From Octopus sinensis (taxonomy: Eukaryota), in contig NC_043024.1 of NCBI RefSeq assembly GCF_006345805.1, forward strand, positions 5,394,001 through 5,458,000: DNA of 64,000 bases. The letters are read 5' to 3'. The notes under the pieces are model-generated. The model was not told the origin of the DNA. It was given only the letters and a program-made list of their open reading frames with translations, and did not search any database. How positions within the stretch are numbered: position 1 is the stretch's first letter; the number at the start of each line of letters is the position of its first letter. Positions 7,229-8,097 of the stretch are shown here, piece after piece. The position numbers and the translations under genes are program-made.

Positions 7229-7533
7229 ATAACACTTTATTGTATTCAAGCTGATTAAGAAGTGCTCTATACTTAGACATACAGTTTTGAATTTTATGGA
7301 TGGACAGACAGGACACAATTGCTATAACTTCATGTATGGGTGAACTAGGTAACAAAACAGGTTTCACTTCTAACATAGAACAAAGCCCTGAGAATTAATT
7401 ATACACGATATGTATGTATGACGTAATAATACATTGGGAGAATTCAAACTAAATAAACATATAAACATTATTATATACAAAATAGAAAATGTCCTGGTTT
7501 ATCTTGTCATTGCCAGTGAGTACTTACAGTGAT

Positions 7534-7920
7534 ACTCTTTTACTTGTTTCAGTCATTTGACTGCGTCCATGCTGGAGCACTGCCTTTAGTCGAGCAAATC
7601 GACCCCGAGACTTATTCTTTGTAAGCCCAGTACTTATTCTATCGGTCTCTTTTTGCCGAACCGCTAAGTGACGGAGACGTAAACACACCAGCATCGGTTG
7701 TCAAGCAATGCTAGGGGGACAAACACAGACACACACATACATATACATATATATACATATATACGACAGGCTTCTTTCAGTTTCCGTCTACCAAATCCAC
7801 TCACAAGGCATTGGTCGCCCCGGGGCTATAGCAGAAGACACTTGCCCAAGATGCCACACAGTAGGACTGAACCCGGAACCATGTGGCTGGTTAGCAAGCT
7901 ACTTACCACACAGCCACACC
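7534..7920 (-). mobile_element. Near full-length family A SINE inserted at an exon 3' boundary
   Basis: tRNA head, CORE-like segment, internal TA/TG tract and GACTGAAACAAGTAAAAGAGT tail. Flanked by TGAT at 7530-7533 and 7921-7924 (possible short TSD). Confidence 0.9.
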
Positions 7921-8097
7921 TGATTGTAAAAATGTTTGTAATTTTTCTTTCAAATGTTGATTTTTTATGTAGTCCAATGGAGTCACTTTCTTCTTCTTAT
8001 TGCGATGGTATAAGCTGGCTCCTTGGCTGGCAAGATAACTCCCAACTACTATTCCAGAGAGCCTCCTATCCATGTCCAGTTGGAGCTCTTTGCAGCA
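7907..8097 (-). CDS. Exon of ankyrin-repeat (Mind-bomb-2-like) gene A
   Basis: Acceptor TTTCGTCATTTGCAG precedes 8097. Reads CCKELQLDMDRRLSGIVVGSYLASQGASLYHRNKKKKVTPLDYIKNQHLKEKLQTFLQS, in phase with the phase-0 donor at 13596. The 3' end assumes the SINE-derived GTAAGT at 7906-7901. Confidence 0.72.

What the first reader, a model, noticed from the sequence alone, without database searches (positions are those of the whole stretch)
7522..8097. SINE inserted 2 nt before a splice donor supplies an in-phase replacement donor
Seen (minus strand): the exon ends ...TTA CAA TCA, then the SINE head GGT GTG GCT GTG TG|GTAAGT (donor 7906-7901). On the far side of the SINE tail lies ATCA CT|GTAAGT (7527-7522), with ATCA present on both sides. 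Inference: the ancestral exon ended TCA CT|GT (phase 2), and the SINE's internal GTAAGT is also phase 2. Using it keeps the frame and adds four residues (GVAV), whereas using the old donor includes the SINE and stops at TAA 7905-7903. Every family A SINE head carries this TG|GTAAGT, so the family is a portable donor cassette.
Basis: partly seen in the sequence, partly recalled or inferred. Interest (0 to 1): 0.8.

Follow-up and report, generated by a model that had tools for sequence, protein, structure and literature searches.

The report
SINE ends an orphan octopus exon
A short mobile element (SINE) did land two bases before the end of an exon in an octopus gene copy and does carry a good in-frame splice signal. 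But this copy is only a two-exon leftover with nothing found to splice to, and both species' annotations simply end the protein inside the SINE, so it is an ordinary insertion rather than a rescue.

Summary
The sequence observation is correct. The window is Octopus sinensis chromosome CM016886.1. On the minus strand, exon 8097-7921 is followed by a sense-oriented SINE (7920-7534) flanked by ATCA (7924-7921 and 7533-7530). The displaced old donor CT|GTAAGT is at 7529-7522. The SINE's own TG|GTAAGT is at 7908-7901.

Three paralogous empty sites and five paralogue proteins show that the ancestral junction was TCA CT|G, so both donors are phase 2.

The rescue reading is not supported. The locus is a 2.24-kb, two-exon fragment of an octopus MIB2-like (ankyrin-RING-Death) gene family. 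Homology to two collinear paralogues starts at 13846 and stops at 7418. No RING or Death exon lies within 9.5 kb downstream, and no ankyrin exon lies within 50 kb upstream on that strand. The annotated product in O. sinensis and O. vulgaris (123 aa) ends ...TFLQSGVAVW*, which means read-through to TAA 7905-7903.

GTAAGT is present in all six SINE heads in the window and abuts the A-box-like motif. The "portable donor" idea is plausible from sequence but untested. This is a new instance of a known kind and of low interest.

The parts
13596..13808 (-). Upstream exon of the fragment. It encodes an ankyrin repeat (DSVKLDIGNHKKMTPLLEAV...PILDE), runs from acceptor ag 13810-13809 to donor GT 13595-13594, and is phase 0 at both ends. 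The annotated CDS starts at the internal ATG 13772-13770.
   Evidence: Sequence; tblastn; Pfam Ank hit for P0004. The CDS span 13772-7903 is 5870 nt, which equals the gene span in L003.
7921..8097 (-). Focal exon (ancestral part), CCKELQ...TFLQS, 59 codons, following acceptor cag 8100-8098.
   Evidence: It is 85-95% identical to the homologous exon of the paralogues.
7921..7924 (-). 5' copy of the 4-nt target-site duplication ATCA.
   Evidence: 4-nt overlap of the two BLAST segments against the empty site.
7534..7920 (-). Sense-oriented SINE copy of about 387 nt. It consists of a tRNA-like head, an internal (TATG/TG)n microsatellite and a 190-nt tail ending ...AAGTAAAAGAGT(A). The head is 93% identical to the consensus and is 5'-truncated or diverged by about 6-8 nt.
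   Evidence: It is present in the O. vulgaris orthologue with only 2 substitutions and absent from paralogues L001, L002 and L005.
7901..7906 (-). GTAAGT inside the SINE head, a potential phase-2 5' splice site (TG|GTAAGT). It overlaps the in-frame stop TAA 7905-7903 that ends the annotated protein.
   Evidence: P0004 ends GVAVW; U1 duplex -10.7 kcal/mol. In the consensus, GTAAGT occupies positions 23-28 and starts at the last base of the A-box-like motif at 13-23.
7530..7533 (-). 3' copy of the target-site duplication ATCA.
7522..7529 (-). The displaced last two exon bases CT (7529-7528) plus the ancestral donor GTAAGT (7527-7522).
   Evidence: Identical to the paralogue junctions TCACT|gtaagtactcactggcaa.
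7418..7521 (-). Remnant of the ancestral intron. Homology to the parent gene family ends at 7418.
   Evidence: It is 95.7% identical to L001 and L005, and then diverges from both at the same base.
9149..12942 (+). hAT DNA transposon inserted in the intron between the two exons, with an intact 713-aa transposase ORF at 9849-11990. It accounts for the longer intron compared with the paralogues.
   Evidence: Empty site in L005 9344/9345; TSD GTGCATAT/ATGCATAT; TIR CAGTGGCGTGC/CAGGGGCGTGC; Pfam DUF4371 and Dimer_Tnp_hAT.

Best explanation
A tRNA-like SINE retrotransposed in sense orientation into the last codons of an exon. This happened in the common ancestor of Octopus sinensis and O. vulgaris, after a 2.24-kb piece of a MIB2-like (ankyrin-RING-Death) gene had been copied to this chromosome.

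The copied piece holds only two exons: one ankyrin exon and the exon that normally precedes the RING exon. The SINE separated that second exon from its own donor by about 390 nt. It placed a GTAAGT at the new exon end, and that GTAAGT contains an in-frame TAA.

As annotated in both species, the reading frame runs 15 nt into the SINE and stops, giving a 123-aa ankyrin-only product (...TFLQSGVAVW*).

The splice-donor-like motif belongs to the SINE's Pol III promoter region: its first G is the last base of the A-box-like TGGCTGTGTGG. This is why every young copy of the subfamily carries it. That it is in phase with the old donor is a one-in-three coincidence.

Shown: the insertion, the ancestral junction, the phase, the fragment boundaries, and the annotated read-through. 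Inferred: that the event was neutral and that the fragment is a decaying or non-functional duplicate.
For: - Window identity: the window matches L003 (O. sinensis CM016886.1) at 100%, and the O. vulgaris orthologue L004 at 98.7-99.3% with the SINE present.
- Empty sites and junction.
- Paralogue proteins reading TFLQS-L-C..C.
- Fragment boundaries: homology to L001 and to L005 begins at 13846 and ends at 7418 in both comparisons, while L001 and L005 are collinear with each other over more than 19 kb.
- Missing exons: tblastn with full-length paralogues finds no RING or Death exon in window 1-7900 or in the 2.1 kb beyond it. It finds no further ankyrin exon on the minus strand up to 64000.
- Annotated products: XP_036370631.1 and CAI9742032.1 are identical and end GVAVW. 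The O. vulgaris annotation came from a separate EVM/PASA pipeline that used Iso-Seq and RNA-seq (PMC10700109).
- SINE head: A-box-like at 13-23, B-box-like at 56-66, GTAAGT at 23-28. A tRNA-like cloverleaf appears only at relaxed ARAGORN settings.
- Age: the head is about 7% diverged from the consensus, close to the reported SINE expansion at JC 0.065 in O. vulgaris (PMC13282606).
Against: - No transcript data could be examined, so actual use of the 7907 donor, the 7528 donor or read-through is not measured.
- The SINE donor is stronger than the old donor by U1 complementarity, and it makes a compact 191-nt exon. If the region is transcribed, splicing from it is mechanistically plausible.
- A 384-aa gene model starting at the zinc-finger ORF (window 18035) spans this locus on the same strand and continues beyond the window. 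Downstream acceptors therefore exist somewhere.
- Both exons of the fragment are still open, although at about 3-6% divergence this has little weight.
- Only 9.5 kb downstream could be read, and octopus introns can be longer than that.
Confidence: 0.65

Rival explanations
1. The SINE's TG|GTAAGT is the functional donor of this exon and splices in frame to the family's RING exon. It preserves an ankyrin-RING-Death protein that gains GVAV and has Leu changed to Trp at the junction.
For: Both donors are phase 2. The paralogue RING exons start with G, so TG|G gives Trp and no stop. The SINE donor has better U1 pairing than the old donor.
Against: No RING or Death exon lies within 9.5 kb downstream in O. 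sinensis or O. vulgaris. Homology to both paralogues ends 110 nt after the old donor. The upstream ankyrin-repeat exons and the gene start are also missing across 50 kb. Both annotations end the CDS at the TAA inside the donor motif.
Confidence: 0.07
2. The SINE donor is used, but not for rescue. The focal exon (acceptor 8098, donor 7907) would be spliced as a cassette or terminal-extension exon into unrelated transcripts that cross the locus, such as the zinc-finger gene model that starts at 18035 and runs past the window start, or a non-coding RNA.
For: A same-strand 384-aa gene model spans L003 5738 to beyond 25870, that is window 18035 to below 1. The exon has a good acceptor (tcatttgcag|) and a strong SINE donor, and it is 191 nt long.
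Against: The 384-aa product was not retrieved by searches with the two exons, so that model skips them. No transcript evidence is available, and the zinc-finger search did not return the model.
Confidence: 0.15
3. The locus is transcriptionally dead. The 123-aa 'protein' would be an annotation artefact produced by protein-homology projection onto a pseudogene fragment, so neither donor nor the stop codon has any consequence.
For: The model starts at an internal Met of an ankyrin exon and lacks every other family exon. No Logan-assembled contig encodes this product; only the two NCBI genome records do. The sister paralogue L001 is visibly decaying, with three frameshifts in its ankyrin exon and frameshifts in its RING exon.
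Against: Two different annotation pipelines call the same ORF, although the second used protein alignments and may not be independent. Both exons remain open.
Confidence: 0.13

Closest known systems
TE exonization and TE-derived alternative 5' splice sites (Alu, B1, MIR exonization in mammals; from my own knowledge, not tested here)
   Same: A SINE brings a near-consensus splice signal next to or into a gene, with the potential to extend or create an exon. The signal is inherited from the element's consensus, so many copies share it.
   Different: Here the motif lies in the sense strand of a tRNA-like head and overlaps the Pol III A-box region. Classic Alu exonization mostly uses the antisense strand. 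The element sits at the very end of an existing exon rather than deep in an intron. No spliced transcript is known, and the current annotation reads through the motif.
SINE insertions at exon-intron boundaries that truncate or mis-splice genes (for example canine SINEC_Cf in PMEL/merle and HCRTR2/narcolepsy; from my own knowledge)
   Same: A SINE lands within a few bases of a splice site and separates the exon from its signal. The outcome is a truncated or aberrant product.
   Different: Those cases hit functional single-copy genes and give phenotypes. This case hits an orphan two-exon duplicate of a multicopy family and is fixed in two species.
tRNA-derived SINEs of octopus (Ohshima and Okada 1994, cited in PMC9223172; SINEs are 11.6% of the O. 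vulgaris genome, PMC13282606)
   Same: A short dispersed multicopy element with an A/B-box-like head of about 75 nt that can be drawn as a cloverleaf, followed by a tRNA-unrelated body.
   Different: I could not compare it with the published OK/OR/OO sequences, so the family name is unknown. ARAGORN at default settings and Rfam do not call the head a tRNA. The tail ends in ...AAAAGAGTA rather than poly(A), and the TSD is only about 4 nt.
Octopus MIB2-like ankyrin-RING-Death gene family (for example XP_029656407.1 = P0015)
   Same: The two exons are 85-97% identical to the corresponding exons of intact members, with the same exon boundaries and phases.
   Different: The window locus lacks the N-terminal ankyrin array, the RING exon, the short repeat exons and the Death-domain exon. 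It is a fragment, not a member with the family architecture.

Membership tests
tRNA-derived SINE | Internal Pol III promoter: A box (TRGCNNAGTGG) and B box (GGTTCGANNCC) spaced about 30-60 nt apart | tested here: met
   In the consensus head, TGGCTGTGTGG lies at 13-23 (1 mismatch) and GGTTCAGTCCC at 56-66 (2 mismatches), with starts 43 nt apart. This is a motif match only; promoter activity was not tested.
tRNA-derived SINE | The head folds as, or aligns to, a tRNA cloverleaf | tested here: inconclusive
   ARAGORN at default settings finds no tRNA in the window. Rfam gives no tRNA hit at E<=10. At relaxed settings (-ps60) ARAGORN draws a 74-nt cloverleaf with 6 of 7 acceptor pairs on the consensus head.
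tRNA-derived SINE | Dispersed multicopy element with insertion polymorphism between homologous sites and target-site duplication | tested here: met
   The window holds 6 heads and 3 near-full-length copies. The focal site is filled while three paralogue sites are empty, with ATCA duplicated. The TSD is short (4 nt) and its limits are ambiguous.
tRNA-derived SINE | 3' tail shared with a partner LINE | not tested
   No partner LINE was sought.
TE-derived functional 5' splice site (exonization) | Consensus GT donor motif contributed by the TE, in the transcript's sense strand | tested here: met
   GUG|GUAAGU at 7909-7901. U1 duplex -10.7 kcal/mol, against -6.8 for the ancestral donor and -10.8 for the upstream exon's donor.
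TE-derived functional 5' splice site (exonization) | Spliced transcripts that use the TE donor | not testable with these tools
   No read data are available. Indirect evidence is negative: the only annotated products (P0004, in two species) require read-through of the motif.
TE-derived functional 5' splice site (exonization) | A downstream acceptor and exon that continues the reading frame | tested here: not met
   No RING or Death exon of the family lies in window 1-7900 or in the next 2.1 kb in O. sinensis or O. vulgaris. Sequence further downstream could not be fetched.
MIB2-like ankyrin-RING-Death E3 ligase gene | Ankyrin repeats | tested here: met
   Pfam Ank E=1.6e-6 on P0004.
MIB2-like ankyrin-RING-Death E3 ligase gene | C3HC4 RING finger and Death domain downstream of the focal exon | tested here: not met
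   Present in paralogue P0015 (zf-C3HC4_3 1.2e-10, Death 8.2e-10) and as exons in L005 and L001. Absent from the window locus.

The most novel reading that the evidence does not exclude
This abundant octopus SINE subfamily carries a perfect U1-complementary GGUAAGU fused to its Pol III A box. Every sense-oriented copy in a transcribed region would then be a strong ready-made 5' splice site that also holds a stop codon in one frame. If such copies are used genome-wide, the subfamily would be a major lineage-specific source of exon extension, cryptic exons and truncated isoforms in Octopus. The focal exon would be one instance, spliced from 7907 to a distant exon.
Probability: 0.15. Interest if true: 0.55.

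Novelty: new member of a known kind. Interest (0 to 1): 0.2.

Why it matters
As it stands, this is a clean, datable example of a SINE landing at an exon-intron boundary in a redundant gene fragment. It is fixed before the O. sinensis/O. vulgaris split, which PMC10700109 puts at about 2.5 Mya. It is useful mainly as an annotation caveat, because the 123-aa "MIB2-like" protein ends in SINE-derived residues.

The only wider point concerns the Pol III A-box region of one young octopus SINE subfamily, which also reads as a consensus 5' splice site. SINEs make up about 11.6% of the O. vulgaris genome (PMC13282606). A genome-wide junction survey would therefore be cheap and could show whether this motif shapes the cephalopod transcriptome. 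Nothing found here shows that it does.

Tried and rejected
1. Looked for a predicted protein spliced at the SINE donor. Two protein searches returned only read-through P0004 and paralogues with the ancestral junction.
2. Tried to obtain the 384-aa same-strand gene model so as to read further downstream. The zinc-finger query was swamped by generic C2H2 proteins, and exact look-ups of the 188-aa zinc-finger products were not in the collection. Sequence more than 9.5 kb downstream therefore stayed out of reach.
3. An exact look-up of the hAT transposase, meant to identify the source genome, failed. The source was later identified through P0004.
4. I first took L001 for an orthologous empty site. 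I rejected this because the window is itself O. sinensis and L001 is an unplaced O. sinensis scaffold, so L001 is a paralogue.
5. Tests for selection had no power. O. sinensis and O. vulgaris differ by 1 synonymous change across 395 exon nt, against a local rate of 0.48%. dN/dS against the paralogues is 0.46-0.62 over 58 codons.
6. ARAGORN at default settings and Rfam did not recognise a tRNA in the SINE.
7. BLAST of the flanks of the 2.24-kb fragment found no shared carrier element that would explain how it was copied.
8. The bacterial, viral and metagenome collections were not scanned, because they cannot contain octopus loci.

Full report
**What is in the sequence**

On the minus strand an exon begins after the acceptor ...tcatttgcag at 8097. 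It stays open as CCKELQLDMDRRLSGIVVGSYLASQGASLYHRNKKKKVTPLDYIKNQHLKEKLQTFLQS up to 7921. It is followed directly by GGT GTG GCT GTG TGG TAA. GTAAGT occupies 7906-7901 and the in-frame TAA occupies 7905-7903. About 390 nt further on lie ATCA (7533-7530), CT (7529-7528) and GTAAGT (7527-7522). ATCA is also present at 7924-7921.

**The inserted block is a SINE**

- The 27-nt head occurs six times in the window with 3 or fewer mismatches, against none expected from shuffles.
- BLAST and MAFFT show three near-full-length copies of about 400 nt, plus several head-only or tail-only copies at 89-90% identity.
- The element has a head of about 165 nt, an internal TATG/TG microsatellite, and a 190-nt tail ending ...AAGTAAAAGAGTA.
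- The consensus head starts TAGGCGCAGGAGTGGCTG. The focal copy (...CAGGTGTGGCTG) therefore lacks or has diverged in its first 6-8 nt, which blurs the element/TSD border by a few bases.
- The consensus has an A-box-like TGGCTGTGTGG at 13-23 and a B-box-like GGTTCAGTCCC at 56-66. GTAAGT lies at 23-28, so the G of the donor GT is the last base of the A-box-like motif.
- ARAGORN at default settings and Rfam do not call a tRNA. With relaxed settings ARAGORN draws a 74-nt cloverleaf.
- Octopus SINEs are described in the literature as tRNA-derived (PMC9223172). I could not match this copy to a named family.

**Source and gene**

The exon peptide hits Octopus sinensis LOC115231989 (P0001) and a Logan contig (P0002). 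A composite query returns a set of octopus "E3 ubiquitin-protein ligase MIB2-like" or "ankyrin-3-like" proteins. Among them is P0004, which is 100% identical to the window.

- P0004 is both XP_036370631.1 (O. sinensis) and CAI9742032.1 (O. vulgaris).
- Its O. sinensis locus L003 (CM016886.1) is 100% identical to window 1-23772. The window is therefore CM016886.1:5,394,001-5,458,000.
- The O. vulgaris orthologue L004 is about 99% identical and contains the same SINE.
- Intact family members such as P0015 have ankyrin repeats, a C3HC4 RING and a Death domain.

**Ancestral junction**

Three paralogous loci have the empty site:

- L001, an unplaced O. sinensis scaffold.
- L002, a Logan contig.
- L005, which carries the intact gene for P0015.

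All three read ...TTTTTAC(A/T)ATCACT|gtaagtactcactggcaa. Against L001 the window aligns up to 7921 and resumes at 7533, with a 4-nt overlap, ATCA. The RING exon in L001 and L005 begins cacag|G TGT CGG TGG TGT. The proteins P0003, P0005, P0010, P0012 and P0015 all read ...TFLQS-L-C(R/W)(W/F)CQEKKATVTLHPCQH.

The SINE's TG|GTAAGT is in the same phase. Spliced to a paralogue-type RING exon it would give ...QS GVAV W C..., which is four added residues plus a Leu-to-Trp change.

**Why the rescue reading fails**

1. *The annotation reads through the motif.* The only annotated product of this locus, in both species, is 123 aa and ends ...TFLQSGVAVW. This requires G7906 and TAA 7905-7903 to be exonic, so the models read through the SINE motif rather than splicing at it. 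The O. vulgaris annotation came from an EVM/PASA pipeline with Iso-Seq and RNA-seq (PMC10700109). It also used protein alignments, so it is not fully independent.
2. *The locus is only a fragment of the gene.* Homology to L001 and to L005 starts at window 13846, 35 nt upstream of the ankyrin exon 13808-13596. It ends at window 7418, 110 nt past the old donor. The break points are the same in both comparisons, whereas L001 and L005 are collinear with each other over more than 19 kb.
3. *No partner exons are found.* tblastn with full-length paralogues finds only the two exons. There is no RING, short-repeat or Death exon in window 1-7900 or in the 2.1 kb beyond it in either species. There is no further ankyrin exon on the minus strand up to 64000.

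Apart from the SINE, the extra length within the fragment is a hAT transposon in the intron.

The simplest history is as follows. A 2.24-kb two-exon piece was copied here at about 3% divergence from L005. The SINE and the hAT were inserted afterwards. The SINE arrived before the O. sinensis/O. vulgaris split, which PMC10700109 dates to about 2.5 Mya. The SINE head is about 7% diverged from the local consensus. That is close to the SINE burst at JC 0.065 reported for O. vulgaris (PMC13282606).

**What remains possible**

Judged by sequence alone, the SINE motif is a good donor. It gives 8 paired bases with the U1 5' end at -10.7 kcal/mol. The old donor gives -6.8 and the upstream exon's own donor gives -10.8 (a simple duplex model using the U1 sequence from general knowledge).

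A 384-aa gene model starts at the C2H2 zinc-finger ORF at 18035, spans the locus on the same strand and continues beyond the window. The region may therefore be transcribed, and distant acceptors exist. Use of 7907 as a cryptic donor cannot be excluded without reads.

Tests for selection have no power.

**The "portable donor" claim**

- All six heads in the window have GTGGTAAGT.
- A copy shared by paralogues L001 and L005 has GTGGTAAAT with a 2-nt deletion.
- Two older related families in the window have GGTTAG or GGTTAA at this position.
- The motif therefore belongs to one young subfamily, and its position next to the A-box-like element explains why it is uniform.
- Whether it is spliced anywhere is untested.

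**Verdict**

The functional interpretation is not supported. This is a new instance of a well-known kind of event: a SINE insertion at a splice boundary, with a TE carrying a splice-site-like motif. It sits in a redundant gene fragment and is of low interest. A modest genome-wide question is attached.

Noticed in passing
window 9149-12942 (+): Apparently complete hAT DNA transposon. It has an intact 713-aa transposase ORF (9849-11990; Pfam DUF4371 and hAT dimerisation domain), terminal inverted repeats CAGTGGCGTGC/CAGGGGCGTGC, and an 8-bp target duplication GTGCATAT/ATGCATAT. The paralogue L005 (9344/9345) has the empty site. It may be a recently active copy.
   Followed up: partly
window 522-7226 (-): Retroelement of 6.7 kb bounded by about 900-bp direct repeats (522-1417 and 6326-7226, 95% identical). 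It encloses a reverse-transcriptase ORF (3528-5012, Pfam RVT_1) and a 213-aa ORF with no Pfam hit (5663-6304). It could be an LTR-type or Penelope-like element with pseudo-LTRs and was not classified.
   Followed up: partly
window 17469-18035 (-): C2H2 zinc-finger ORF of 188 aa, annotated as a single-exon gene in O. vulgaris. In O. sinensis it is the start of a 384-aa gene model that spans the MIB2-like fragment on the same strand and runs beyond the window start. I could not retrieve that product.
   Followed up: partly
window 61513-61659 (+): An exon 94-96% identical to the N-terminal ankyrin exon of family member P0012 (residues 6-54 and 203-251), on the opposite strand. A second member or fragment of the MIB2-like family therefore starts near the right end of the window.
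   Followed up: no
L001 9826-10044 and 13329-13440: The O. sinensis paralogue LOC115231989 looks like a decaying copy. Its ankyrin exon has three frameshifting indels relative to the window, one of which creates the TGA that ends the upstream 763-aa model. Its RING exon needs frameshifts to read CRWCQEKKATVTLHPCQH...CPICH. The locus is annotated as two separate genes. Assembly errors in homopolymers cannot be excluded for the 1-nt indels.
   Followed up: partly
window 25900-26600, 36300-38900, 41000-43550, 58800-59400: Very long imperfect (TG/TA/CA)n-type microsatellite tracts produce many spurious long ORFs. The blocks at 36.3-38.9 kb and 41.0-43.5 kb appear to be inverted copies of each other, judging from mirrored ORF translations and BLAST coordinates.
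   Followed up: no
window 166-192, 7894-7920, 16227-16253, 17229-17255, 62915-62941 (-) versus 15693-15719 (+): Five of the six heads of this SINE subfamily lie on the minus strand. Four of the five inside the span of the same-strand zinc-finger gene model are in sense orientation. The numbers are too small to read as orientation bias.
   Followed up: no
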